From the IMG/VR virus record IMGVR_UViG_3300033145_003233, positions 186,001-250,000 of that record: 64,000 nucleotides of DNA, one strand, 5' to 3'. Below are positions 10,467 to 62,864 of the stretch, one piece after another. The position numbers and the translations under genes were made by a program. The notes beneath the pieces are model-generated. The model saw only the letters and a program-made list of their open reading frames with translations. It had not been told where the DNA came from and made no database searches. Positions within the stretch are counted from its first letter, which is position 1, and each line of letters opens with the position of its first letter.

Positions 10467-11483
10467 TTATTTTACTGCTACAGCACTCTTAACTAATGGG
10501 CATTGAGGATTCCCATGTTTAAAATTTCCATATTTTGCGAAAGTTGCACTCTGACAATCTGTTCTGGAGCATTTGTCCCAATATCCACATCCTTCGCATT
10601 CTTCAGGCTTGGGCTTTTCTGCCTTTTCCCGAACTATTTTTAACAGGGGATGATTATACCATATGTCAGTCACTTTGTCAAGTGAAATATTCCCAAGTGA
10701 AATAGGATATGCCCCACATATCTTCACATCTCCATTAGGAGTGACGACAAGGTATCCTGTTGGCCCTTTCCCACAGTTACAGGGGCTAAGTTCCTCTGAG
10801 GATATAGTATCATCTACAAGGAACTCATAGCACAGGGGCAGGAGGTCTGTCCTGATCTCAGGATTATTCTTTTTGAATTGTATTAGAGTTTTAGCCATCA
10901 TAAGGACTTGGTGTGGTTCCATTTCGTATTCATTATCTATTTCTTCTACTTCTACTCTGTTGTAGGGTTTGATTTGGAACCATTCTATTCCTGCTTTAGG
11001 GACATTTTCTAAGACCATATCAAGACGTTTATTTAAGTAGCTTTCTCTTGTTACGGTATATTTGACCATTTGAGGAAATCCATATAGTTTCAACACCTCC
11101 ATAAGTTTTTTTATTTCTTCCCAATCGACAGGATCATAGATACTTATTCTGAATCTTGTCAGTCCTGCACTTTTAAAATCTGCTAATGTTCTATAATCTA
11201 TAAGTGTTCCATTAGTAAATATACAGGTTTCTTTTCCTTGGCTGTGGGCTAGTTCCACTATTTTAAGAGTCGTATTTATATATGGCAGGTATAGTGGTTC
11301 TCCTCCTGTAATGATAATTCTATCTACATTTTCCCTTACCATTTCTTCGTTCATCACTTTTTCAACATGGTCAAAATCAAGCATTGGAGATTTATCTTTT
11401 AGTTGTTGCAGGCAGAATCCGCATTTAAGATTGCAATCATAGCCTATTGCCAGTTTAAGTTGTTTTAGTATAGGAGCATCCAT
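10467..11483 (-). CDS. Radical SAM/SPASM-domain protein
   Basis: CNLKCGFC (CX3CX2C), ITGGEP, CNCG...VVTPNGDVKIC, CEGC...C...C. Confidence 0.9.
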   Translation of the reverse strand: MDAPILKQLKLAIGYDCNLKCGFCLQQLKDKSPMLDFDHVEKVMNEEMVRENVDRIIITGGEPLYLPYINTTLKIVELAHSQGKETCIFTNGTLIDYRTLADFKSAGLTRFRISIYDPVDWEEIKKLMEVLKLYGFPQMVKYTVTRESYLNKRLDMVLENVPKAGIEWFQIKPYNRVEVEEIDNEYEMEPHQVLMMAKTLIQFKKNNPEIRTDLLPLCYEFLVDDTISSEELSPCNCGKGPTGYLVVTPNGDVKICGAYPISLGNISLDKVTDIWYNHPLLKIVREKAEKPKPEECEGCGYWDKCSRTDCQSATFAKYGNFKHGNPQCPLVKSAVAVK

Positions 11484-11486
11484 ATT

Positions 11487-11851
11487 TTATCTTACCACAT
11501 CTTTCAGGCTAAAATTCTTTATTTTATATGGTCGTGAATTTTTACACTGTCCACATGTTACTTTCTTTTTATCTTTTGTCCAAAGTTTACCTTCAGGCCA
11601 GACTCCACAAGCGAGGTTTATCTGGTGAATCATTACTTTATAATGTATCTTTTTCTTCTTTATATTTTTTCTCCGCAATCATTACACCACTCACTTTCAG
11701 CATCTTTGAGAGTTGAACCATGCCCCTTTTTCCCACACTCTTTTTGAAGAGCCTCGAGTTCCATATAAAAGCCGGTCCTAACCTGCTTCGCCTCCATATC
11801 GGCAATAACAATAGATCTTTCTATTCTTACTCTTCTTTCTTCTATAGTCAT
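11487..11851 (-). CDS. Two small Cys-containing proteins (11487-11678, 11660-11851)
   Basis: VTCGQC and WCNDC motifs. Confidence 0.55.
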
Positions 11852-11852
11852 T

Positions 11853-12947
11853 TTATCCTTCCACCTCCTGAGGTATTAAATTTGCCGATTCTAAATATTT
11901 TACAATATGATCAAACACAAAATAATACCCCTTACAGAAATCTTCTCTGTCTTTGTATTCTTCTATCCCTGCTGCATATGCCAGGAAGAAACAACCTCCC
12001 TTACATATAGAGTTATATTTACAGGTAGGGCAAACTTCTCCTGTGGACTTCCCCACTTTCGCCAAGAAGGTTTTTCGTTCCTCTGAATTTAGAATATCTT
12101 CCAGGTTATTAGTAGTTAAACTACCAAAGCAGGTCTTGGGATGAGCTAGGAACTTATTACATGATGGAAAGACCATACCTTCTGGGTTAATAGCAAATAT
12201 TTGATCTTGACAATGGAAACAGGGCCTATCTACATCTATCTGCTTAAGATGTTTCTGACAGGCATTCATTATATTATCTAATGGAGTTATTCTTTCGAGA
12301 CATTGTTCTCCTCTTTCTCCCATCCACAAGTCGAACAGTTCTATCAGGAATCTACCAAACTGACCTTTCTCCTGTATCATGAGATCTGTATTCTGTTCTC
12401 CATTCCCTTGTACCACAAAGCGAGATACTGAGAAGCTGGTTATATTCTGCTGTTGTAAGAATTGATAAATTTCTTTTGCTTGATGTATATTTCTATTAGT
12501 AACTACTGTATTAACATTTACTGCCATTCCTGCTTTTTGGAGTTTCTTAATTGTTTCCATAGTATCTCTGAAGTTATTCACCACTCTTAGAGAATCATGG
12601 TTTTGTGATGGCAGGTCAAGGCTTGTTCTTATTTGAAAATTATGATCTGCAAAGTATGTCATACGGTCTTCAGACATTAATGTAAGATTAGTTTGTATTA
12701 TATTAGTGAAGTTGATATTAGTTATTTTCTTTTGTGTTTTAACTATTGTTACGAAATATGACATAGACTGTAATAGAGGTTCTCCTCCTGTCCATGAGAT
12801 AGTTACATCTCCATCGCAGAATTCAGCTATTTGGTATAGAACTTTCTCTACTGTCTCATTTGACATATATTTAGGATCATCTGTTTTAGCATAGCAATAA
12901 TCACAATCCAGATTACAGTAATCAGTTGTCCTGATAGCGAAGTTCAT
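11853..12947 (-). CDS. Radical SAM/SPASM protein, anaerobic sulfatase maturase (AtsB/anSME)-like
   Basis: CNLDCDYC, WTGGEPLL, TSLD, INPEGMVFPSC, CPTCKYNSICKGGC. Confidence 0.9.
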   Translation of the reverse strand: MNFAIRTTDYCNLDCDYCYAKTDDPKYMSNETVEKVLYQIAEFCDGDVTISWTGGEPLLQSMSYFVTIVKTQKKITNINFTNIIQTNLTLMSEDRMTYFADHNFQIRTSLDLPSQNHDSLRVVNNFRDTMETIKKLQKAGMAVNVNTVVTNRNIHQAKEIYQFLQQQNITSFSVSRFVVQGNGEQNTDLMIQEKGQFGRFLIELFDLWMGERGEQCLERITPLDNIMNACQKHLKQIDVDRPCFHCQDQIFAINPEGMVFPSCNKFLAHPKTCFGSLTTNNLEDILNSEERKTFLAKVGKSTGEVCPTCKYNSICKGGCFFLAYAAGIEEYKDREDFCKGYYFVFDHIVKYLESANLIPQEVEG

Positions 12948-21488: not shown

Positions 21489-22208
21489 TTAACTTCCTTT
21501 CACTAATGAACTATTACAAGGGTCATATTTCGAACAGAGAACAGCAGTTTTGCAATATAAGCTGTCCAACAGTTCCCATTTATTTCTGAATAAAGTTCCT
21601 TCTGGAATATGCACTCTCATAAGACCATGGTACACCACACAGAGAGTCAAGTTTGTGCATCTTTTACAAGATCTTTGTAGATAGGTTCCTTTTTGAGCCA
21701 ATTGCTTTATAGAGGCTTTAGTGGTGTCGCTCACTGTAACACCAAGAATCTTCATTACTTCTCCCTTAACTCCTGCTAGGGTTAATCCTTGCCCAGAGAG
21801 ATGGTAATAAGCTTCACTCTCAGCTCCTTCTTTTGTTTTTTGAGAATGCAGAAGTCCTAATAAAATGTGTTCTGATCCCACGTAATTATGACTTAAAGAT
21901 CTGGCTTCTTCTATAGCATATTCTATAACTTTTTTGCTAGTCTCTGTTTGGGGTAATTTTTCTCCCACTGAAGAAGATGATTCGCCTTCTTTATCTTCTA
22001 ATATGGCATGAACCAAAACTAGTAGTTGGTCTCTGGTTATTTTCAACTCTTCACTATGATTTAAAGCGGTATGTCCCACTCCGCTGCCTTCTTTGAGTAG
22101 ACCATAAAGCACATGTATAGTGCCTATATAATCACTATTAAATGTATGAGCAGCCTCGTTAGCCAACTTCATTACTTTTCTTGCTCTATCAGTAAATCTT
22201 TCAAACAT
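21489..22208 (-). CDS. ClpC N-terminal (double Clp-N) domain protein lacking AAA modules, with Cys-rich C-terminus
   Basis: MFERFTDRARKVMKLAN...YIGTIHVLYGLLKEGSGVG and KKVIEYAIEEARSLSHNYVGSEHILLGLL; tail CKRC...C...C...C. Confidence 0.9.
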   Translation of the reverse strand: MFERFTDRARKVMKLANEAAHTFNSDYIGTIHVLYGLLKEGSGVGHTALNHSEELKITRDQLLVLVHAILEDKEGESSSSVGEKLPQTETSKKVIEYAIEEARSLSHNYVGSEHILLGLLHSQKTKEGAESEAYYHLSGQGLTLAGVKGEVMKILGVTVSDTTKASIKQLAQKGTYLQRSCKRCTNLTLCVVYHGLMRVHIPEGTLFRNKWELLDSLYCKTAVLCSKYDPCNSSLVKGS

Positions 22209-34211: not shown

Positions 34212-34929
34212 CTATTTTTTATTTTGTTCTTCTTTTTCTCTTAAAGTTCTAATACTATCTTTCACCAATGTCACTCCCTCATCTATCTTCAATTTCTTTT
34301 TAACTTTTGTGACTTTCTCTCCCAATCCGAATAAATGTATATTTTTAACGAACCACTCTATCCCCCATTTACAGAACATTCCCAATACCACTACTATAAG
34401 AGCTATCAAGAGGGGGAAAAAAAGAAAAAGAAGAAAACCAAAAAGCAGTGTTGTAACAAGGCATATGACTCCTGCGACTACAACAACCAACAAAGCTTTT
34501 TTCTTCTTTTTATTCAGCATTTTCATAATCTATTATTTCAAATCTTTCTGTATCATCTTTCATTTCTTTTCTTAACCCAATCGCACCGCCACAGGCACAT
34601 ACAACGGTATAAAGAAGTTTAATTTCTATTTTCTGTTCCCAGTTATTATTAGATAGCTCTATAACTTTTGCATTACCCATTATTTCATAAGAATTATTCC
34701 CTATTAAAAGAATCGCCCTATGTTCGCTATCCCTTTTCAAAAGTAGCTTACGTTTCATATCATCCATTGCTATTCTAAAATACAGCCAATAGACAACTTT
34801 ATCATCTATCATATGAATAGTAACACTAGCAACCTTATCTATATGTATCTCAAAAGCTGGATCTGTGCAAAATTTTATATAATTATTTTTTCCATTTGGC
34901 ACAAAAAATTTATAATCTATTTTTTTCAT
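34212..34929 (-). CDS. Membrane protein (34212-34526) and RF-motif protein (34510-34929)
   Basis: The second ORF ends ERFEIIDYENAE. Confidence 0.65.
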
Positions 34930-44069: not shown

Positions 44070-45719
44070 TTACTCTCTTTTTCCAAATCCGAAAGCAGAA
44101 CTAGTTTCTCCAACTCCGAATTTCTCCATAGTTTCTATGATCTCATCGGCCCATTTAATATCAATTCTTTTGACTTTTCTTCGACTACTGATATGCTTAA
44201 GATTCAAGCTATTAATAAATTCCTGAGCCTCAGCCCCTGTCCATCCATCAGTTTTAGAAACAATATGATCCAATGTCTTTTTATTTGTTTTCCATTGTTT
44301 TAATCTGTCTTTAAACATCCTTTGCCTAAGTTCTTCACAAAGAGCAGGCACTTCCACTACTCTATCAAAACGACCTGGCCTGTTCTTCAAGGCACTCTCA
44401 ATAATTCTTAATCTATTAGTCGTCCCTATGGTAACAGAATTTTTAATAGAATTCACTCCATCAAGAATATTCATCAATGCACCGAGAGAAATCACATCTC
44501 CACCCTTCTCTCTATCTTGACTAAACAAGTCTAAATCCTCTAAGATTATGATACAAGGAGACAAGAAATCTGCTAGCTTATATAAGGCCTTAATAGAAGT
44601 TATAGCTTTATAATTATTCTCTGCTAATATCTCAGGAGTAATCCATATAACAGTATAATCAGGAACTAGATTACAAATGATATTACCTATAGTGGTCTTA
44701 CCAGTCCCTGCTCTCCCGTGTAAAATTATTCCTCTTTTAGTTATTCCGCAAGCATTGTATTTTTTAACATTTTTAACAAAACCAAAAATCTCTAAATCAA
44801 AGAGATCTTTAATACTCTCTGGATAATAATAATTGTCCCATGTATATGAATCTTTGATCTCTACCTCTGAGAAAGATGCTGATATCATATTAACATCTTT
44901 TAATTTTGCTCCTCTTAGACAATTATGTTTTTTAGCAAACTCTTGCAAATCATTAATAATATTTTTTGAGCAACCCGTATCAGTACTAAAACATGTTATA
45001 GAAGCTCCTCCTCGTTCCCCATCAAAATACAAGAAAAAAGCTACATTTTCTTGTTTCTTCCCCTTCACCTTTTCAAAATATAAAAATCCCGTAGTGGTAA
45101 ATGTGGTTTCTTTACCTTTAACACTCCATGGATTCTTTTCTGGAGGAATAGAATTACCATGATCATCAAAATTCAATTCTCCTGCAAAGCTAAAACCCTC
45201 TTCCTCCATAAATTTAACCATACACTCCATTAAAATCAAAGTGATAAGAGGATGTGCTTGATAGGGATGATTTTTAATATCATTAACACTTGTAACTCCT
45301 AGAAATCTACAAAGAATTCTATAATCAATAGAACGAATAAAATCTATTTTAATCTGATCTGCAAATTTAACCGCTACTAACTCTTTATATCTTTGTTCTG
45401 CTATATCCTCTGCTATAGATTGAAGAGGACGTGGAACACCTCCACTTATAGTCGCTGTTTGAGTCTCAAACATGCGATCATCGCACGGAACAGGCATACA
45501 TTCATCACCATCATCATCAAAATTTAACTCTTCAATTACTTGTTTTACTATTTCTGTTGAAGTTGAAGCACGATGTACCGGGCTTTTTACAATAGATTGA
45601 TCTTTAATCATACGAGTATTACCTTCCATTAATATAAGTTTTTCATAATCTTCCTCCCGGATATCAAAAAATCTACACCAGAATGCTTTTAATTCTCTTT
45701 GTACCTTATTTCTTTTCAC
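44070..45719 (-). CDS. Classical-clade AAA+ ATPase with a long N-terminal domain
   Basis: GRAGTGKT (Walker A), IIILEDLD (Walker B), TTNR...ALKNRPGRFDR (SRH). Confidence 0.92.
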   Translation of the reverse strand: MKRNKVQRELKAFWCRFFDIREEDYEKLILMEGNTRMIKDQSIVKSPVHRASTSTEIVKQVIEELNFDDDGDECMPVPCDDRMFETQTATISGGVPRPLQSIAEDIAEQRYKELVAVKFADQIKIDFIRSIDYRILCRFLGVTSVNDIKNHPYQAHPLITLILMECMVKFMEEEGFSFAGELNFDDHGNSIPPEKNPWSVKGKETTFTTTGFLYFEKVKGKKQENVAFFLYFDGERGGASITCFSTDTGCSKNIINDLQEFAKKHNCLRGAKLKDVNMISASFSEVEIKDSYTWDNYYYPESIKDLFDLEIFGFVKNVKKYNACGITKRGIILHGRAGTGKTTIGNIICNLVPDYTVIWITPEILAENNYKAITSIKALYKLADFLSPCIIILEDLDLFSQDREKGGDVISLGALMNILDGVNSIKNSVTIGTTNRLRIIESALKNRPGRFDRVVEVPALCEELRQRMFKDRLKQWKTNKKTLDHIVSKTDGWTGAEAQEFINSLNLKHISSRRKVKRIDIKWADEIIETMEKFGVGETSSAFGFGKRE

Positions 45720-54128: not shown

Positions 54129-55331
54129 TTTTATTATCCTTCTCCCCCGTAACGCTCTTAGTCCTCTCCTCCAGAGTTTCCCATACTTCTAATGCAGCTT
54201 TTAAATAAGTTCCTACATAACCCACATAGCTTTGCACAAACTGTTTTAACGTTCTTCTTCTACCTTGCTCCATCCCTAGTTGGACTGCTAATCCTATTAT
54301 TTCTTCATAAACATCTCTTCCTTGATCTTCTTTAGAATAAGTCAGATGCCAAGCATCTAAAGTTTCGCTAGGATGTATATTAGCACATCTCTCAGTTTTT
54401 CCCCTATCTAAACCTTCCCATTCAATCCCTTCTTCATAAACCTTATCTCCCTTTTCCATAGCAGTTCTCAAAGCTTTTAGAAGAGGATCTGTAACATCAT
54501 TAAACATAACTGGCTCTCCATCTGAGGGCCATGGCTTATTGTTTCCTTCTTTAAAAGGCTCTTTTGTATTCATTCTGAAAATCCCCTTGCCTGAGAGTAG
54601 AGAGGGGCCAGTAGAGCCATGCCATCTATTAACCCAGACATGTACCCTCTTATATAATCCTCTCCCCCGCATTTTTCTGGATTGTTTTTTAAATTTTTCT
54701 CTGCTGCTTTATATTTCTTTTCTAATCGCTCATAATCCCTTTTCCGTTCTTCTGTTCTTTTATCTATTGCAGAATTTTCACTCATTTAATCTCCCCTTCC
54801 ATATCTAACATATCAAAGCGATTAGACTGAGACTCATCAGAAGATACTTCAACAACCTCTCCTTGCTCTGGCTCCTGTGATCCCCCAAATACAACATCAG
54901 TCACTTCTACCTTAAAAATTTTCATAATAGATGAAACGATTCTTAGACACAATAACATAGAAGCGAACACAGGCCAGAAAGCAATCAATAACATACCATT
55001 ATCATCAACTGAGAAAACTTGATTAGTAACCCTATAATAAAGAGCTACCACAATAATCCCCAATAGGAAATATAACACAGCCCCCGCTGCTAAAATCAAT
55101 TCTAGCCCCATCCCCATATCCTCTTAAATCTAACTATCCAAATGGACAGTCGCAATGATCATCTACTGTGCCACAATCTGGACAAATTTTCTTACTTTCT
55201 AACATCCTAAGATATTTCTCACTATCTCTCTTGTAAGCTGTTCTATCTTTACGTAGATTTATTATCTCTCCGTCTCGTACTTTGAGAATCTTAATTAAAT
55301 CTTCTTTAGTTCTACCTATATCATATTCCAT
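54100..55331 (-). CDS. Four hypothetical ORFs (54100-~54573, 54570-54785, 54782-55117 TM with RF motif, 55134-55331)
   Basis: ORF track; 54782 ends NRFDMLDMEGEIK. Confidence 0.65.
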
Positions 55332-58446: not shown

Positions 58447-58854
58447 CTAAAAATCCATATTCTTAAAACGCTCATCATAATGTCTTAATTTTTTAATCGC
58501 TAGAATAAAATCTTTTCTTTCTTTTTCAAGAGTTTGTATCGCTCCTTCTTGATTCTTTACTCTCTTCTTTAATTCTTCATTCTCACTCTCTACTCTATGG
58601 AACGCTTCTCTATAACCGTCTTTCTCCCTTTCTTCATCCTCGAAATAATATTTCCAAGAATTAACCTCTTCTTCTAACTTCTCTACTTCGTCTCTATGTT
58701 TCTGAAATACACCATCAGAACAATCCATAGCCTCATCCCAACTAAGATTGTAGCGATGTGCAAAATCTGTAAAACAACTTATAGAGCAAAATCCATGATA
58801 GTTATTAATAGAAAATTTATTACAATTTCTGCAAAGTATAGTTAAATCATTCAT
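58447..58854 (-). CDS. Zn finger plus coiled-coil protein with terminal RF motif
   Basis: CRNC...FCSISC; ends ERFKNMDF. Confidence 0.7.
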   Translation of the reverse strand: MNDLTILCRNCNKFSINNYHGFCSISCFTDFAHRYNLSWDEAMDCSDGVFQKHRDEVEKLEEEVNSWKYYFEDEEREKDGYREAFHRVESENEELKKRVKNQEGAIQTLEKERKDFILAIKKLRHYDERFKNMDF

Positions 58855-58859
58855 CTATT

Positions 58860-59369
58860 TTAAAAGGGACAATCATCTTCGGCTTCTTTGGCTTCTGCCT
58901 CGTAGGGATTATAATTAGAGTCCCAATCTCCATCATCTTCTTTTTCATCCAGACCTGCTATCCCAGAAGGAATTGGTTTATCTATAGCGTCTACAGGATT
59001 TAAATCTATATTACCAAAACGGTCATCAGCATTTCTAAATAAAGTTAAAAGAGACTCTTCTTTCTTGCTATAATGGAATTTAAGATACTTATCATCATCG
59101 CTCACAGAAACTTTCCAGTCAGAATATCGGTCTTTTATAAGAGCTACTAAGGCATCTTGATAATGTTCTGGAAAATATTGATCACCAATAGCAGTGGTAT
59201 CTGTAGTTCCTATAATGATATCTCCTATAGAGATACGAGCTATTCCCTGTTCTCTCAATTGTTCAAAGTTCAGAACTAGCAATTCATCTATATTTTTTTC
59301 ATATTTCTTAAATAGGTTATAAGTCCGTTTAACATATTCTTCTTCTGCTTGTTTTTTATTATATGCCAT
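58860..59369 (-). CDS. Hypothetical protein with RF motif and acidic ...DDCPF tail
   Basis: DRFGNIDL internal; SSB-like C-terminus. Confidence 0.7.
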   Translation of the reverse strand: MAYNKKQAEEEYVKRTYNLFKKYEKNIDELLVLNFEQLREQGIARISIGDIIIGTTDTTAIGDQYFPEHYQDALVALIKDRYSDWKVSVSDDDKYLKFHYSKKEESLLTLFRNADDRFGNIDLNPVDAIDKPIPSGIAGLDEKEDDGDWDSNYNPYEAEAKEAEDDCPF

Positions 59370-59371
59370 AG

Positions 59372-59564
59372 TTATAAATCCAAAATTTCAAATCTACTTT
59401 CTATAGGATCACATATCCCTAATCTTGGTGTTGCTATAGAGAAATAATAAGCATCCTGACACTCTACGCTGCAAAATTGGCGGGCCACAGCACCGACATT
59501 ATCATAAATGCTAATTTGAGTAGCGGTTCATGTCGCAATATGCACAATCACCTATAAGAAACAT
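59372..59564 (-). pseudogene. Frameshifted small Zn-finger gene with terminal RF motif
   Basis: Frame 0 MFLIGDCAYCDMN...; +1 frame ATQISIY...FCSVECQ...ESRFEILDL*; span of 193 nt (3n+1). Confidence 0.6.
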
Positions 59565-60019
59565 TATATATCTAACAATTCATATCTAAAGATAGATTTA
59601 GCATGTTTCTCTACCATCTCATTGATATTTTTCACTTCTTCTCTTATCTCTTTTTTAATATCTCTAACTTGTGTTTTAAGAGCAAGGATAGCTAGTTTTA
59701 AGGATTCTTTCTCTTTTTTTAATTCTTCGAGAGTTGACATAATTTTTTGTGATTCCGTTTTTATATGTTGTTCCAATTCTCTATTCAGCCATTTCTTTAT
59801 TTCTTTCTCTACTTTTTTAGAGGGGAAACGATCCTTCATGCCATAACAGTTAGCATCTGTAGATGAGACAGCGGGTACAGCGGGAACAGTTGTCCAATCA
59901 TTTATATTAGAAGTAGAAGTAGATGCTGAAATTTTTGGATTATAGTTAGATATCAGATCTTCTAAGGTCTTCTCTTTATACATGTTATATTTACCGTGAT
60001 AACTTGGCATCTTTGGCAT
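59564..60019 (-). CDS. Coiled-coil protein with terminal RY motif
   Basis: Ends FRYELLDI. Confidence 0.7.
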   Translation of the reverse strand: MPKMPSYHGKYNMYKEKTLEDLISNYNPKISASTSTSNINDWTTVPAVPAVSSTDANCYGMKDRFPSKKVEKEIKKWLNRELEQHIKTESQKIMSTLEELKKEKESLKLAILALKTQVRDIKKEIREEVKNINEMVEKHAKSIFRYELLDI

Positions 60020-60021
60020 CT

Positions 60022-60522
60022 TTACAAATCTATTATGTCAAAACGATCATAATATTCTGACAACTCTTTATTCTTTTCTTCTAACTCTGATATTCTTATC
60101 ATCATATCTGCTCTAGTTATTTTATTTTTCTTAATTTTGGCTCTGAGATCTTTTATTTGTTTCTTGGATTTTGTCAAGGCATGTTGCAGCCCCTTCTTCT
60201 TCTCAGAAACCAACTTCAACTCTGCAATAAGATCTGCCTTGGTTTTATTAGTTGTTTTAGTTTTTCTCTTTTTCTTGGATGCAATTATCTTCTTAAGCTT
60301 CTTTGTCAAGGCCTTAGTTTCTTTTTGATCATCATGACCATACGAAGTTGCTCCATCTCCTATGTTCTTATAATACCCATCAACATATGCTGCTAGCTTC
60401 TCGATCTCCCCAAACATATTTTTATCAGTTTCGCTCATCTTGATAATCTGTACCAGCTCTTCTTGCCACTTGTTGTTGAAGTAATCTGCCATCTCCCATC
60501 CGACATTTCCCTCTTCGCCCAT
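60022..60522 (-). CDS. Coiled-coil protein with terminal RF motif (true start probably MSETDK, ~60438)
   Basis: Ends DRFDIIDL; ATGA overlap with the upstream ORF. Confidence 0.7.
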   Translation of the reverse strand: MGEEGNVGWEMADYFNNKWQEELVQIIKMSETDKNMFGEIEKLAAYVDGYYKNIGDGATSYGHDDQKETKALTKKLKKIIASKKKRKTKTTNKTKADLIAELKLVSEKKKGLQHALTKSKKQIKDLRAKIKKNKITRADMMIRISELEEKNKELSEYYDRFDIIDL

Positions 60523-61214: not shown

Positions 61215-62864
61215 TTATATCCCCACATCAATACACTCTAATAATGACCAACTTCCACCATTGTTATTCCACACTTTAAGACTAGCAACGGAACCATCAA
61301 CCTCTACAGAAACAAACGTATGAAAATTATCCCCTCCGCTTTCATTCCCTGCATTTCCTGCATCTATTTGCCATACTTGACCATCTCCTCCGCTCCACAT
61401 ATCACCTGTGACCCTAGAAGTATTATCCCAAGAATTATTTACTTGATAGCGGCTATAAGCATGAGTATGCCCGCAGAAAAAAGCAACTACATTATTGTCT
61501 TCCATTAATTGCCAAAGAATATTTCTATCACTAGGATAAGCATTTAAAGAATCCGTCAAATGTCTATTGTGAGGAAAGACAGGAGCATGAGCTATTACGA
61601 ATTTAGGAGACTGAGGATACAAGTCAAATACCCCATCCAACCACTGCACCAATTGAGGGGTAGCACGTCCACTATATCCATTTACTGTAAGCCCTCGATA
61701 ATCAGCATTAGCATTAGTAGTCCCGTCCCAGTATATATTAAGAACCACAAATAGAAATCCCTTATGTTCGAAATAATACATTGTCTCTTCACAACCAACA
61801 GGGCCAGCAAACGCATAATCTGATATCGCTTCTCTACTACTAGACCCATTAGCATTATTCCATTCTGCCCTCAACCACGGCACATCATTAACACTACTGA
61901 TCTCATGATTCCCTATAGCAGGAATCCATCTATAATTGCTCCCAAATTTACTATTGATTATATTCCTGATATCAGAAACAGTTTCTCCAGAGGAGTTCCC
62001 ACACATATCTCCAGCTATAATATGAAAATCTCCTTTTCCTGCATTGACTTTAATAGCATCGCATACACTTCTGAATTGGGAATAGCTATTTCTCATATCT
62101 GCTGTAACTATAAAATGCCAAGGTAGAAAATTAGGTTCTGTCTCAGATGATTTAGATTTAACTGGTTCGGGAATATGAGCCAACCAATGTTGAGAGAACA
62201 TGGTGAAATCTACTATATCTACCGAACCATCTTTATTAAAATCATAAGGCATATCTTCATATCCAAGAGGATGGACCGTAATTTTTATATTACTTATATC
62301 CTGCTTCGATGGACCTATTGCAGGATTATCTGTTGCAGTTAATACCATCTCATGAAGACCCACTTGCTCCATTGTGGGGTTCCATATAAATAGTTTAGGG
62401 TCATATTGAGAACCTTCAAAAGTAGCTCCTGAAGGAAGATCACTTGTTGTTAATTCAACATTATCTCCATCTGGATCTGTAGCAGTAAATAAATATTCAA
62501 ATTCAGTTTTGACAGGAATTGCAAATTGAGTATTAGAAACAATTATCCCTACAGTTTTAAAAATAGCGGCTGAAGTAAAAGTTATTCTATAATGGCCGGC
62601 CTGAACATCCGTAGGAGTCCATTGAAATAAGGTTCCATCAAATACGCTTCCTTCCGGCAGGTTCCTTGCATAGACAAGAGAATTACTATCTGAGACAATA
62701 GTAATAGACAAAGATTCTCCCTCATCTACTTTTTTAAAATCTACTATCTCTTGAGATCCCCCCTCTACATCAGAAATAGAGATTGCAGAATAAGAGATAG
62801 AAGAGAAGGCGAGAATTATTAATGCCAAAAATATTTTACTGTTTCTACAAATTGTTTCCACCAT
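61215..62864 (-). CDS. Secreted protein: two Ig-like (He_PIG-type) domains, EF-hand/dockerin motif and metallophosphoesterase
   Basis: Signal peptide; LP.G..F...F.W.P twice; DFNKDGSVDIVDF; ADMR, AGD, GNHE, AHAP, GHTH. Confidence 0.85.
   Translation of the reverse strand: MVETICRNSKIFLALIILAFSSISYSAISISDVEGGSQEIVDFKKVDEGESLSITIVSDSNSLVYARNLPEGSVFDGTLFQWTPTDVQAGHYRITFTSAAIFKTVGIIVSNTQFAIPVKTEFEYLFTATDPDGDNVELTTSDLPSGATFEGSQYDPKLFIWNPTMEQVGLHEMVLTATDNPAIGPSKQDISNIKITVHPLGYEDMPYDFNKDGSVDIVDFTMFSQHWLAHIPEPVKSKSSETEPNFLPWHFIVTADMRNSYSQFRSVCDAIKVNAGKGDFHIIAGDMCGNSSGETVSDIRNIINSKFGSNYRWIPAIGNHEISSVNDVPWLRAEWNNANGSSSREAISDYAFAGPVGCEETMYYFEHKGFLFVVLNIYWDGTTNANADYRGLTVNGYSGRATPQLVQWLDGVFDLYPQSPKFVIAHAPVFPHNRHLTDSLNAYPSDRNILWQLMEDNNVVAFFCGHTHAYSRYQVNNSWDNTSRVTGDMWSGGDGQVWQIDAGNAGNESGGDNFHTFVSVEVDGSVASLKVWNNNGGSWSLLECIDVGI

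What the first reader, a model, noticed from the sequence alone, without database searches (positions are those of the whole stretch)
58447..60522. Shared C-terminal short linear motif R[FY]xxxD-hydrophobic on seven unrelated proteins, five of them consecutive genes
Seen: ERFKNMDF* (58447), DRFGNIDL (58860, internal before an acidic tail), SRFEILDL* (59372, hidden frameshifted ORF), FRYELLDI* (59564), DRFDIIDL* (60022), NRFDMLDM-EGEIK* (54782) and ERFEIIDY-ENAE* (34510). The last two extensions coincide with overlap of the next gene. The protein bodies differ (Zn fingers, coiled coils, a TM protein), so this is a tag and not paralogy. Inference: a docking code that recruits a protein set to one hub, such as a sliding clamp (compare T4 LDFLL tails on gp33/gp55/gp43), an AAA+ or Clp machine (this window encodes an AAA+ ATPase and a ClpC N-domain), or a virion/compartment import factor. 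I know of no description of this motif.
Basis: partly seen in the sequence, partly recalled or inferred. Interest (0 to 1): 0.8.

Follow-up and report, generated by a model that had tools for sequence, protein, structure and literature searches.

The report
Shared C-terminal address tag in huge phages
About a tenth of the small proteins of this 548-kb uncultivated phage and its relatives, although unrelated to each other, end in the same 7-11-residue peptide (…P-I-x-[S/N/D]-R-F-E-I-L-D-L-stop), which looks like an undescribed address or docking tag read by one still unidentified receptor.

Summary
The window's seven cases are mostly off-consensus copies (only 59372 is a consensus copy) of one tail, [P-I-x-S/N/D]-R-[F]-[E/D]-[I]-[L/M]-D-[L/I]-COOH.

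I found 61 tail-bearing ORFs in the 178 kb of this 548-kb contig that I could read. About 40 lie in one 17-kb array. Across seven IMG/VR contigs there are 133 non-redundant cases. One tagged protein family has 1,974 clusters (50% identity) in public metagenomes, and 142 of its best 150 carry the tail.

Main evidence:
- The strict motif never occurs inside proteins in the sampled DNA.
- Its codons vary freely, so selection acts on the protein, not the DNA.
- The 133 bodies fall into 81 unrelated clusters.
- Orthologues keep the tail (89% identity) while bodies diverge (51%).
- AlphaFold2 models show folded bodies followed by a disordered linker and tail.

It is therefore a modular short linear motif. 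The receptor is not identified. I favour docking to an AAA+/Clp-type machine, as a degron or an SspB-like tether (about 0.3). Next come a capsid or compartment cargo tag (about 0.2) and a clamp or replisome hub (about 0.12). The clamp is weakened because the phage's own DnaE polymerase ends in a different, canonical-looking clamp motif. No Pfam or NCBIfam model matched the tail, and a full-text search of the held papers for the motif strings found nothing.

The parts
60022..60522 (-). 166-aa coiled-coil protein ending DRFDIIDL-stop (tail codons 60025-60045)
   Evidence: Its orthologue in the 298-kb relative (L084:2387-2710) ends ...EYQEYYDRFDILDL. No Pfam or PHROG family.
59564..60019 (-). 151-aa coiled-coil protein ending FRYELLDI-stop (tail codons 59567-59587)
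   Evidence: No family.
59372..59563 (-). Small zf-FCS-like gene in two frames. The C-terminal ORF (59372-59488/59506) ends DPIESRFEILDL-stop, the only full-consensus tail in the window. The N-terminal CxxC piece lies in another frame.
58860..59369 (-). 169-aa protein with an internal tail-like DDRFGNIDL (59001-59021), followed by 46 residues that end in an SSB-tip-like EAEDDCPF
   Evidence: The motif departs from the clade consensus at two positions (G, N). Its status as a working tail is doubtful.
58447..58854 (-). 135-aa zf-FCS plus coiled-coil protein ending ERFKNMDF-stop (tail codons 58450-58470)
   Evidence: Its orthologue in the 298-kb relative (L084:2707-3264) carries ...SDRFKLLDL plus a 10-aa extension, next to the orthologous DNA methylase.
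54782..55117 (-). 111-aa protein with NRFDMLDM (54800-54820) plus a 5-aa extension EGEIK
   Evidence: Weak PHROG 7899 hit.
34510..34929 (-). 139-aa protein with ERFEIIDY (34525-34545) plus a 4-aa extension ENAE that lies in a 17-nt overlap with the next gene
44070..45719 (-). Candidate receptor (untested): 549-aa classic-clade AAA ATPase with a 330-aa N-terminal region of unknown fold
   Evidence: Pfam PF00004, 1.8e-16. 65-68% relatives in two related contigs. The N-region has no family.
21489..22208 (-). Candidate receptor (untested): 239-aa stand-alone Clp N-domain protein
   Evidence: Pfam PF02861, 2.1e-13. Relatives in 5 other viral contigs show no tails in 6-kb flanks, which is inconclusive because tails are clustered.

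Best explanation
The motif is a modular C-terminal short linear motif. Its consensus is P-I-x-[S/N/D]-R-[F, less often W/Y/L/S/A]-[E/D]-[I/L]-[L/M]-D-[L/I/F]-COOH. It has been appended to roughly a tenth of the small, soluble, mostly acidic proteins of a clade of huge uncultivated phages.

Shown here:
- It sits at the very end of the chain after a Pro/Asp/Glu/Asn-rich disordered linker.
- It is under protein-level selection.
- It is independent of the fold it is attached to.
- It is retained in orthologues.
- It occurs in lineage-specific 'dialects'.

Inferred: the tail is unstructured on its own and becomes ordered when it docks into a pocket of one shared receptor. It may form a two-turn helix, since [S/N/D]-R-F-E fits an N-cap box. 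Every bearer is thereby addressed to the same machine.

My most likely specific reading (about 0.3, inference) is docking to the N-domain or pore of an AAA+/Clp-type unfoldase, either phage-encoded (AAA+ at 44070-45719, Clp-N protein at 21489-22208) or host. Two versions are possible:
- a common degron that clears a whole class of early or middle small proteins;
- an SspB-like tether, in which a variable target-binding body, a flexible linker and a constant docking tail deliver diverse targets to the machine.

The confidence figure is for the general claim (a docking or sorting tag read by one receptor), not for the receptor's identity.
For: Position specificity:
- In 178 kb of this genome, 61 ORFs carry the strict motif within 20 residues of the end, 42 of them exactly at the end.
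- There are 0 internal occurrences and 0 in a reversed-sequence control.
- In the window, 6 near-terminal cases against 0.07 expected.

Clade restriction:
- Two degenerate DNA scans of 2.9 million IMG/VR contigs put 25 and 34 matches into a handful of related contigs.
- Of the other 55 loci hit, only two have a motif at the end of an ORF (one each).

Protein-level selection:
- All six Arg codons, both Glu, Asp and Phe codons, ATA/ATT/ATC, TTA/TTG and all three stop codons are used.

Modularity:
- 81 body clusters among 133 tagged ORFs.
- Pfam, NCBIfam and PHROGs give no common family.
- AlphaFold2 models of two unrelated families have bodies at pLDDT 85-97 and linker plus tail at 44-56 without secondary structure.

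Conservation:
- 28 reciprocal-best orthologue pairs have bodies 51% identical and tails 89% identical.
- Orthologues of the window's own genes keep the tail.

Breadth and dialects:
- The SH3-like tagged family has 1,974 clusters at E<=1e-3. Of the top 150, 142 carry the tail, as RFEILDL/I, RWEILDL/I, RYEILDLR.. or RFELMDF[D/E/S].
- A 386-kb contig has eight consecutive genes of the dialect PIESRFEL[L/M]DF[D/E].

Client class:
- Median length 106 aa.
- Median body pI 5.5.
- 6% of bodies have a TM-like segment, against 22% of untagged small proteins.
- None of the proteins on which I found an enzymatic, replisome or structural family domain carries the tail.

Context:
- Tagged genes form tightly packed, overlapping same-strand arrays.
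- Some arrays lie inside the replication module, between the two halves of a split DnaE.

Anatomical precedent:
- SspB is a native domain followed by a disordered C-terminal region that ends in a short segment binding the ClpX N domain. The 11-residue ssrA tag is read at its C-terminal end (PMC9963277).
Against: - No receptor has been identified and no binding has been tested.
- No protease partner (ClpP, Lon or an FtsH peptidase domain) was seen in the one third of the genome I read.
- The AAA+ and Clp-N genes are common in large phages. The Clp-N relatives found elsewhere show no tails nearby.
- 21 of 133 tails are followed by 1-16 extra residues. One 13-member paralogous family in the main array replaces F by S or A in all but one member and adds acidic extensions. 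A free terminal carboxylate is therefore preferred but not obligatory.
- The ssrA tag ends in ALAA (PMC9963277), not in acidic-hydrophobic ...LDL.
- Expression timing is inferred from gene neighbourhood only.
Confidence: 0.75

Rival explanations
1. Cargo or sorting tag. The tail binds the inner face of the procapsid (major capsid protein or scaffold) or the import machine of a phage-built compartment. Dozens of small proteins are thereby packaged or imported, as with encapsulin cargo-loading peptides or the T4 capsid-targeting sequence.
For: - The anatomy matches Family 1 encapsulin targeting peptides: short C-terminal peptides that bind a pocket of an HK97-fold shell (PMC8346489).
- The client number is unlimited in such a system.
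- Clients are soluble and small.
- Two tail clusters abut genes that may be structural: a weak DUF2460 match (E 0.005, below Pfam's cut-off), an Fn3-associated domain and a subtilase in L032.
Against: - The largest arrays lie with non-structural genes, and several lie inside the replication module.
- The bodies are mostly acidic, unlike the basic T4 internal proteins that travel with DNA (that comparison is from my own knowledge).
- The polymerase, RecA-like, SSB, helicase and primase proteins, which an imported-compartment model would also have to move, lack the tail.
- The sequence is unlike known encapsulin peptides.
Confidence: 0.2
2. Clamp or replisome docking motif. The tail binds the sliding clamp (phage or host beta) or another replisome hub, as do the hydrophobic-acidic C-termini of T4 gp43, gp33 and gp55.
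For: - T4 precedent: interchangeable hydrophobic and acidic C-terminal epitopes on flexible linkers (gp43 ...EKASLDFLFG) (PMC6212786, PMC2988020).
[quoted passage not shown] The E. coli Pol IV peptide is RQLVLGL-COOH (PMC11139829).
- Tail clusters sit inside the replication module.
Against: - The clade's own DnaE ends in a different, canonical-type pentamer (S-V-D-M-F.., T-V-D-L-F-A, T-I-D-I-F-G) right after the HhH domain, where E. coli alpha has QADMF.
- The tail has F-E where the clamp motif needs Q-aliphatic.
- At least 61 clients in a third of one genome is far beyond known clamp toolbelts.
- No clamp gene was found in the sampled regions. The 368-aa conserved gene in the module gave no match to any solved structure or PHROG family.
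Confidence: 0.12
3. Substrate or recognition site for a modifying enzyme. Candidates are the radical-SAM/SPASM enzymes, the 12 tandem GT-A-like paralogues, or the PARP-like protein. The conserved end would then be a follower peptide or acceptor site (invariant Arg and Asp) rather than a docking tag.
For: - The main array is followed directly by twelve tandem glycosyltransferase-like genes.
- In the 386-kb relative a tail cluster abuts a glycosyl- and methyl-transferase cluster.
- The window encodes three radical-SAM enzymes.
Against: - The bearers are folded domains of 35-371 aa from 81 families, not short precursor peptides.
- The adjacency was seen in only two genomes.
- The GT-like assignment rests on my reading of sequence signatures (GRNK..., YLYYVFLDDD). 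No Pfam or PDB match supports it.
Confidence: 0.06
4. Self-association element. The tails of different bearers bind each other or a scaffold, building a mixed assembly or condensate rather than docking to one receptor pocket.
For: - Many bearers are coiled coils or Zn ribbons.
- The tail mixes hydrophobic and charged residues.
Against: - The tail is only 7-11 residues long.
- The two single-chain AlphaFold2 models leave it disordered and not packed on its own body.
- Invariant Arg and Asp and strict terminal placement point to a specific pocket.
Confidence: 0.05
5. Not a protein feature: chance, common descent of the whole proteins, or a conserved DNA or RNA signal (promoter, terminator, re-initiation site) that happens to lie in gene ends.
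For: - Genes are tightly packed: 84 of 133 tails have an ATG within -3 to +7 nt of the stop.
- The motif was first defined after seeing the data.
Against: - Synonymous positions vary freely, and AGA, CGT and CGC all encode the invariant Arg.
- Nearly all out-of-clade DNA matches are out of frame: 53 of 55 loci have none at an ORF end.
- The bodies fall into 81 unrelated clusters.
- There are no internal occurrences.
Confidence: 0.01

Closest known systems
SspB adaptor tail and the ssrA degron (ClpXP system)
   Same: - SspB is a folded body, a disordered C-terminal region and a short terminal peptide that docks on the N-domain of an AAA+ unfoldase.
- ssrA is an 11-residue tag read at the free C-terminus (PMC9963277).
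- Both systems allow any number of unrelated clients.
   Different: - The sequence is unrelated: ...RFEILDL against the ssrA ...YALAA.
- Here the tag is genome-encoded on dozens of different proteins, not added co-translationally or carried by one adaptor.
- No protease partner is known.
T4-family clamp-binding C-termini (gp43, gp33, gp55) and bacterial beta-clamp-binding motifs
   Same: - Short hydrophobic-acidic C-terminal peptide on a variable flexible linker, shared by otherwise unrelated proteins.
- The ...L-D-L/F end resembles the second half of Q-phi-x-[L/M]-x-[F/L].
   Different: - The clamp motif's Q-aliphatic start is missing.
- The clade's own polymerase uses another motif.
- The client number is at least tenfold larger.
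Encapsulin Family 1 cargo-loading (targeting) peptides; T4 capsid-targeting sequence (the latter from my own knowledge)
   Same: A short terminal peptide after a flexible linker directs unrelated cargo to one HK97-fold shell.
   Different: - Different sequence.
- Encapsulin systems have one or a few cargoes encoded next to the shell gene.
- The T4 signal is N-terminal and is cleaved off.
- Here there is no link to a capsid gene.
Effector families built from a variable body plus a constant docking or translocation module (poxvirus ankyrin-PRANC/F-box, C-terminal signals of secreted bacterial effectors; from my own knowledge)
   Same: - Large, rapidly diversifying paralogous arrays (16-member SH3-like family, 13-member helical family).
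- A constant C-terminal element is carried by many body types.
   Different: Those modules are domains of 30 or more residues, or weakly conserved signals. None is known in phages.

Membership tests
T4-type / beta-clamp-binding motif | Sequence fits LDFLF (T4) or Q-phi-x-[L/M]-[F/L] / Q-phi-x-[L/M]-x-[F/L] (beta clamp) | tested here: not met
   In the tail R-F-E-I-L-D-L only the last three positions fit. Positions 1 and 2 are F-E instead of Q-aliphatic (logo; consensus from PMC11139829).
T4-type / beta-clamp-binding motif | The replicative polymerase of the same genome carries the motif | tested here: not met
   The DnaE finger/HhH halves end in ...SVDMFEDLF...TVDLFA and ...TIDIFG in three genomes. 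None carries RFEILDL.
T4-type / beta-clamp-binding motif | Physical binding to the clamp | not testable with these tools
   No multimer prediction or binding assay is available, and no clamp gene was found in the sampled regions.
C-terminal degron or adaptor tether of AAA+ proteases | Accessible peptide at the extreme C-terminus after an unstructured segment | tested here: met
   112 of 133 tails are exactly terminal. Linker and tail have pLDDT 44-56 with coil. The linker is enriched in P, D, E and N.
C-terminal degron or adaptor tether of AAA+ proteases | A cognate AAA+ unfoldase or protease is encoded or available | tested here: inconclusive
   An AAA ATPase and a Clp-N protein are present in the window. 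No peptidase partner was seen, and the co-occurrence tests were uninformative.
C-terminal degron or adaptor tether of AAA+ proteases | Tail-dependent turnover or delivery | not testable with these tools
   This needs an experiment.
Encapsulin-type cargo-loading peptide | Short C-terminal peptide after a flexible linker | tested here: met
Encapsulin-type cargo-loading peptide | Cargo gene lies next to the HK97-fold shell gene, with one or a few cargo types | tested here: not met
   Dozens of bearers sit in arrays with non-structural and replication genes. No capsid gene was seen nearby.
RiPP precursor family | Short unstructured precursor with a conserved recognition segment and a variable core, next to its maturase | tested here: not met
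   The bodies are confidently folded domains of 35-371 aa from 81 families.
Single paralogous protein family | Detectable homology across the whole length | tested here: not met
   81 BLAST clusters with 62 singletons. Two families have unrelated predicted structures. No shared Pfam, NCBIfam or PHROG family.
Conserved nucleotide signal at gene ends | Conservation at the DNA level beyond what the codons require | tested here: not met
   Free synonymous variation and all three stop codons.

The most novel reading that the evidence does not exclude
A clade of huge phages runs a proteome-scale addressing code of its own. One genome-encoded C-terminal peptide marks about 10% of the phage's proteins, which are fast-evolving small effectors in large paralogous arrays. 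A dedicated phage-encoded machine reads the mark for timed destruction, delivery of bound host targets, or loading into a compartment or the virion. The peptide and its reader co-evolve into lineage-specific dialects (RFEILDL, RWEILDL, RYEILDLR, RFELMDF[D/E]). To my knowledge no such system has been described for any virus of bacteria.
Probability: 0.35. Interest if true: 0.9.

Novelty: new variant of a known kind. Interest (0 to 1): 0.8.

Why it matters
- Function of dark matter. Huge phages carry hundreds of small proteins of unknown function. A single tag shared by about a tenth of them says that these proteins pass through one common step. That step can be found with one peptide pull-down or one co-folding screen, instead of protein by protein.
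- Classification handle. The tag also sorts the dark matter of these genomes into tagged clients and the rest.
- A new layer of control.
- A possible tool. It would also give a portable tag-and-receptor pair for engineering.
- Built-in covariation. The lineage-specific dialects provide a natural covariation experiment for finding the receptor.

Tried and rejected
- Family libraries. Pfam, PHROGs and NCBIfam on the tagged proteins found no shared family. Isolated hits were one DUF4116 repeat protein, Zn ribbons and unnamed PHROGs.
- Literature. Strings such as RFEILDL, RFDILDL and FEILDL returned only misspellings of unrelated words.
- Word-index homologue search restricted to the tail region. 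It returned 2 proteins and is not suited to tail-only similarity.
- Foldseek of the two AlphaFold2 models against the PDB. No match at E<=0.001; one body is a generic SH3-like small barrel, the other has no match.
- GenBank phages. No DNA match, DnaE below 36% identity, and three tagged proteins with no tblastn match. The clade has no deposited relative.
- Cellular genomes.
- AAA+ as a co-occurring hub. Close relatives appear only in two related contigs, so there is no discriminating power.
- Clp-N protein. Relatives in 5 other contigs have no tails in their flanks, but our own flank has none either, so this is inconclusive.
- The conserved 368-aa gene of the replication module as a hidden sliding clamp. 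No PDB or PHROG support.
- The twelve tandem 270-aa paralogues. They look GT-A-like by eye, but no Pfam or PDB hit supports this and no link to the tail was shown.
- The ThiS-like gene inside the array as a reader. It was not found in the sampled loci of the related contigs.
Full report
**1. What the window is**

All long ORFs lie on the minus strand and GC is about 35%. The window is bases 186,001-250,000 of IMG/VR contig 3300033145_003233, which is JGI Ga0366840_1000004, 547,943 bp. It is an accessory arm of a huge uncultivated phage. It encodes Ro60/TROVE-vWA, two RNA ligases, three radical-SAM enzymes, a DndB-like protein, a queuosine-salvage protein, a GMP-reductase-like protein, DNA methylases, an AAA ATPase and a Clp-N protein. 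GenBank phages hold no close relative.

**2. The observation**

- Four tails are exactly C-terminal: genes ending at 60022, 59564, 59372 and 58447.
- Two are followed by 4-5 residues: genes ending at 54782 and 34510.
- One is internal, in gene 58860-59369.

Against 5,000 per-protein shuffles the window has 6 motifs in the last 12 residues where 0.07 are expected, and 4 exactly terminal where 0.009 are expected. Arg is encoded by AGA, CGT and CGC, and the Leu, Ile, Glu and Asp codons differ between sites. The conservation is therefore in the protein.

The small ORF at 59372 carries the only full-consensus tail in the window (DPIESRFEILDL). It looks like the C-terminal half of a frameshifted zf-FCS-type gene.

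**3. The real scale**

I back-translated the motif into a degenerate DNA pattern and scanned IMG/VR.
- The hits piled up in this contig and in two other huge contigs of 351 kb and 298 kb.
- A second pattern added contigs of 219 kb and 65 kb; a 33-kb contig came from the first pattern. A 48-kb contig came from the search for relatives of the AAA+ protein.
- In those loci, runs of consecutive small genes end in [S/N/D]-R-F-[E/D]-I-L-D-[L/I]-stop, usually with P-I four to five residues upstream.
- Of the other 55 IMG/VR loci hit, only two have a motif at the end of an ORF (one each), so the rest are chance DNA matches.

I then walked the contig with exact-protein look-ups to obtain a continuous 152 kb (contig 104,403-256,522).
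- One super-array at 136-153 kb holds about 40 tagged genes among about 55.
- The window's five-gene cluster is a small outlying group.
- Further groups lie in the replication module (399-412 kb), at 429-433 kb and at 521-531 kb.
- In the 178 kb read in total, 61 ORFs carry the strict motif within 20 residues of the end. None carries it internally, and a reversed-sequence control gives none.

Across seven contigs there are 133 non-redundant tagged ORFs, 112 of them exactly terminal. Median length is 106 aa, range 35-371.

A profile of one tagged family (SH3-like, starting MKYKVGDxVKIK) finds 1,974 clusters at 50% identity in 1.84 billion representative proteins. Of the best 150, 142 carry the tail, in recognisable dialects: RFEILDL/I, RWEILDL/I, RYEILDLR.. 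and RFELMDF[D/E/S]. One of these hits lies on a 386-kb contig where eight consecutive genes end in PIESRFEL[L/M]DF[D/E].

**4. A tag, not paralogy and not a DNA signal**

- With the tail removed, the 133 bodies form 81 BLAST clusters, 62 of them singletons.
- Pfam, NCBIfam and PHROGs show no common family.
- All six Arg codons, both codons for Phe, Glu and Asp, three Ile codons, TTA/TTG and all three stops are used.
- In 28 reciprocal-best orthologue pairs between genomes, bodies are 51% identical and tails 89%.
- In the 298-kb relative, the genes next to the orthologous methylase are orthologues of window genes 60022-60522 and 58447-58854. They end in ...EYYDRFDILDL and ...SDRFKLLDL (plus 10 residues).
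- AlphaFold2 models of two unrelated families give confident bodies and a low-confidence, unstructured linker and tail. One body is an SH3-like barrel and the other a helix-plus-sheet domain; neither has a significant PDB neighbour.
- The 12 residues before the motif are enriched in P, D, E, N and I, and depleted of aromatic residues, Cys and Met.
- Tagged bodies are mostly acidic (median pI 5.5) and rarely hydrophobic: 6% have a TM-like segment against 22% of untagged small proteins of the same region.

The pattern [S/N/D]-R-F-E matches a helix N-cap box (S/T/D/N-x-x-E). I therefore infer that the tail folds into a short helix when bound. This is inference only.

**5. What reads it**

Nothing here identifies the receptor. 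What the evidence does say:

(a) Clients. They are many, small, soluble and fast-evolving: a 16-member SH3-like family, and a 13-member helical family in which the tail is NR[S/A]E[I/L]LDL plus a short acidic extension in all but one member. None of the proteins on which I found an enzymatic, replisome or structural family domain carries the tail.

(b) Context. Arrays are tightly packed, co-directional operons. Several sit among replication genes: split DnaE, DnaB-like helicase, primase, gp32-like SSB, RecA-like protein. This suggests early or middle expression, but that is inferred.

(c) Clamp. The clade's DnaE ends in a different, canonical-type clamp motif (SVDMF.., TVDLFA, TIDIFG) directly after the HhH domain, where E. 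coli alpha has QADMF. Other replisome proteins end in acidic-aromatic tips (...DDFANNW...DDFEFD). The tail shares only its last three positions with the clamp consensus. A clamp hub is therefore unlikely, though not excluded.

(d) Terminal placement. The strong preference for the very end (84%) fits readers that engage a free end, such as AAA+ unfoldases, or a pocket closed at one side. Tolerated extensions of 1-16 residues show that the carboxylate itself is not essential.

(e) Precedent. The architecture of body, disordered linker and short terminal peptide is that of SspB, whose terminal segment docks on the ClpX N domain (PMC9963277). It is also that of encapsulin cargo-loading peptides (PMC8346489) and of the T4 gp33/gp55/gp43 clamp epitopes (PMC2988020, PMC6212786).

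(f) Candidates in the window. The window encodes a classic-clade AAA ATPase with an unassigned 330-residue N-region and a stand-alone Clp-N protein. The AAA+ is conserved in relatives. Neither could be tied to the tail.

My ranking of readers:

| Reading | Probability |
|---|---|
| AAA+/Clp-type reader (degron or tether) | about 0.3 |
| Capsid or compartment cargo tag | about 0.2 |
| Clamp or replisome hub | about 0.12 |
| Enzyme recognition site | about 0.06 |
| Self-association | about 0.05 |
| Remainder: a reader of a kind not considered here | balance |

The general statement, that this is a modular docking or sorting peptide read by one receptor, I hold at about 0.75.

**6. Comparison with the known**

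No Pfam or NCBIfam model recognises the tail, and a full-text search of the held papers for the motif strings found nothing. In kind, it is a shared terminal short linear motif that addresses unrelated proteins to one machine. It therefore belongs with clamp-binding tails, degrons and adaptor tethers, and cargo-loading peptides. It fails the sequence definitions of each of these. It also differs in scale (about a tenth of a viral proteome) and in being confined to one clade of huge phages. I therefore class it as a new variant of a known kind.

**7. Limits**

- Only about a third of the genome was read.
- Gene calls are my own simple ORF model, apart from the JGI calls shown by the look-up tool.
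- Expression timing, host and receptor are unknown.
- The counts outside this genome come from loci that were fetched because they contain the motif. They show presence and diversity, not unbiased density.

Noticed in passing
L039:5516-10891 (contig 399.5-412 kb); also L040, L014 and L047: The DnaE-type polymerase is split into a PHP/palm gene (470 aa) and a finger/HhH gene (615-660 aa), with other genes between them. The first half ends ...ELEDDLGGVDRY in all three genomes. In this genome a 110-aa ORF (L039:7994-8326) between the halves ends in the same 13 residues, as if an insertion had duplicated the end.
   Followed up: partly
L039, L040, L047, L014 (replication module): Replisome proteins carry their own acidic-aromatic C-terminal tips: gp32-like SSB ...DDFANNW / ...DWENNF, DnaB-like helicase ...GDDFEFD, a 92-104-aa protein ...EIDMFD / ...EFDFD, and a 368-406-aa unknown protein ...GEIGWGEI. 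DnaE ends in a clamp-motif-like VDMF / VDLF / IDIF. The genome therefore seems to use several distinct terminal motifs.
   Followed up: partly
window 58860-59369: This protein ends ...EAKEAEDDCPF. From my own knowledge this resembles the bacterial SSB C-terminal tip (DDDIPF), so it may mimic SSB. It also carries the internal tail-like DDRFGNIDL.
   Followed up: no
L210:6697-16469 (contig 124.9-134.7 kb): Twelve tandem paralogues of about 270 aa (41-56% identical to the reference copy), each overlapping the next by 8 nt. They carry GT-A-like signatures (GRNK..., YLYYVFLDDDVEL) and a conserved end ...HIIWKDHPFINE. They lie directly downstream of the main tail array. There is no Pfam or PDB hit.
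   Followed up: partly
L043:12374-12592 (contig about 145.5 kb): A 72-aa ThiS-family ubiquitin-like protein (Pfam 1e-12) sits inside the tail array. It ends ...FMGGGNACIF, that is, a Gly-Gly followed by a short extension that would need trimming.
   Followed up: partly
L209:6383-9158 (contig about 168-171 kb): A 434-aa PARP-like protein (WGR, PARP regulatory and catalytic domains) lies next to a 467-aa LAGLIDADG endonuclease.
   Followed up: no
L211:16604-17725: An IS605 OrfB/TnpB-like gene (Cas12f-like TNB domain) lies on the opposite strand in the phage genome. Nearby are an RNase H gene, and PcfJ-like and SLT-like genes.
   Followed up: no
window 10467-12947: Two radical-SAM/SPASM enzymes flank two 63-aa Cys-rich ORFs (11487-11678 and 11660-11851). 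This looks like a small peptide-maturation cassette and is unrelated to the tail.
   Followed up: no
window 61215-62864: A 549-aa protein with a hydrophobic N-terminal segment that may be a signal peptide (by eye), Ig-like (He_PIG) domains, a weak dockerin match (below Pfam's cut-off) and a calcineurin-like phosphoesterase domain lies just upstream of the tagged cluster.
   Followed up: no
L206, L208 (JGI sample 3300033388): Contigs from a second sample encode proteins identical to this phage's, so the same or a near-identical phage occurs in more than one metagenome.
   Followed up: no
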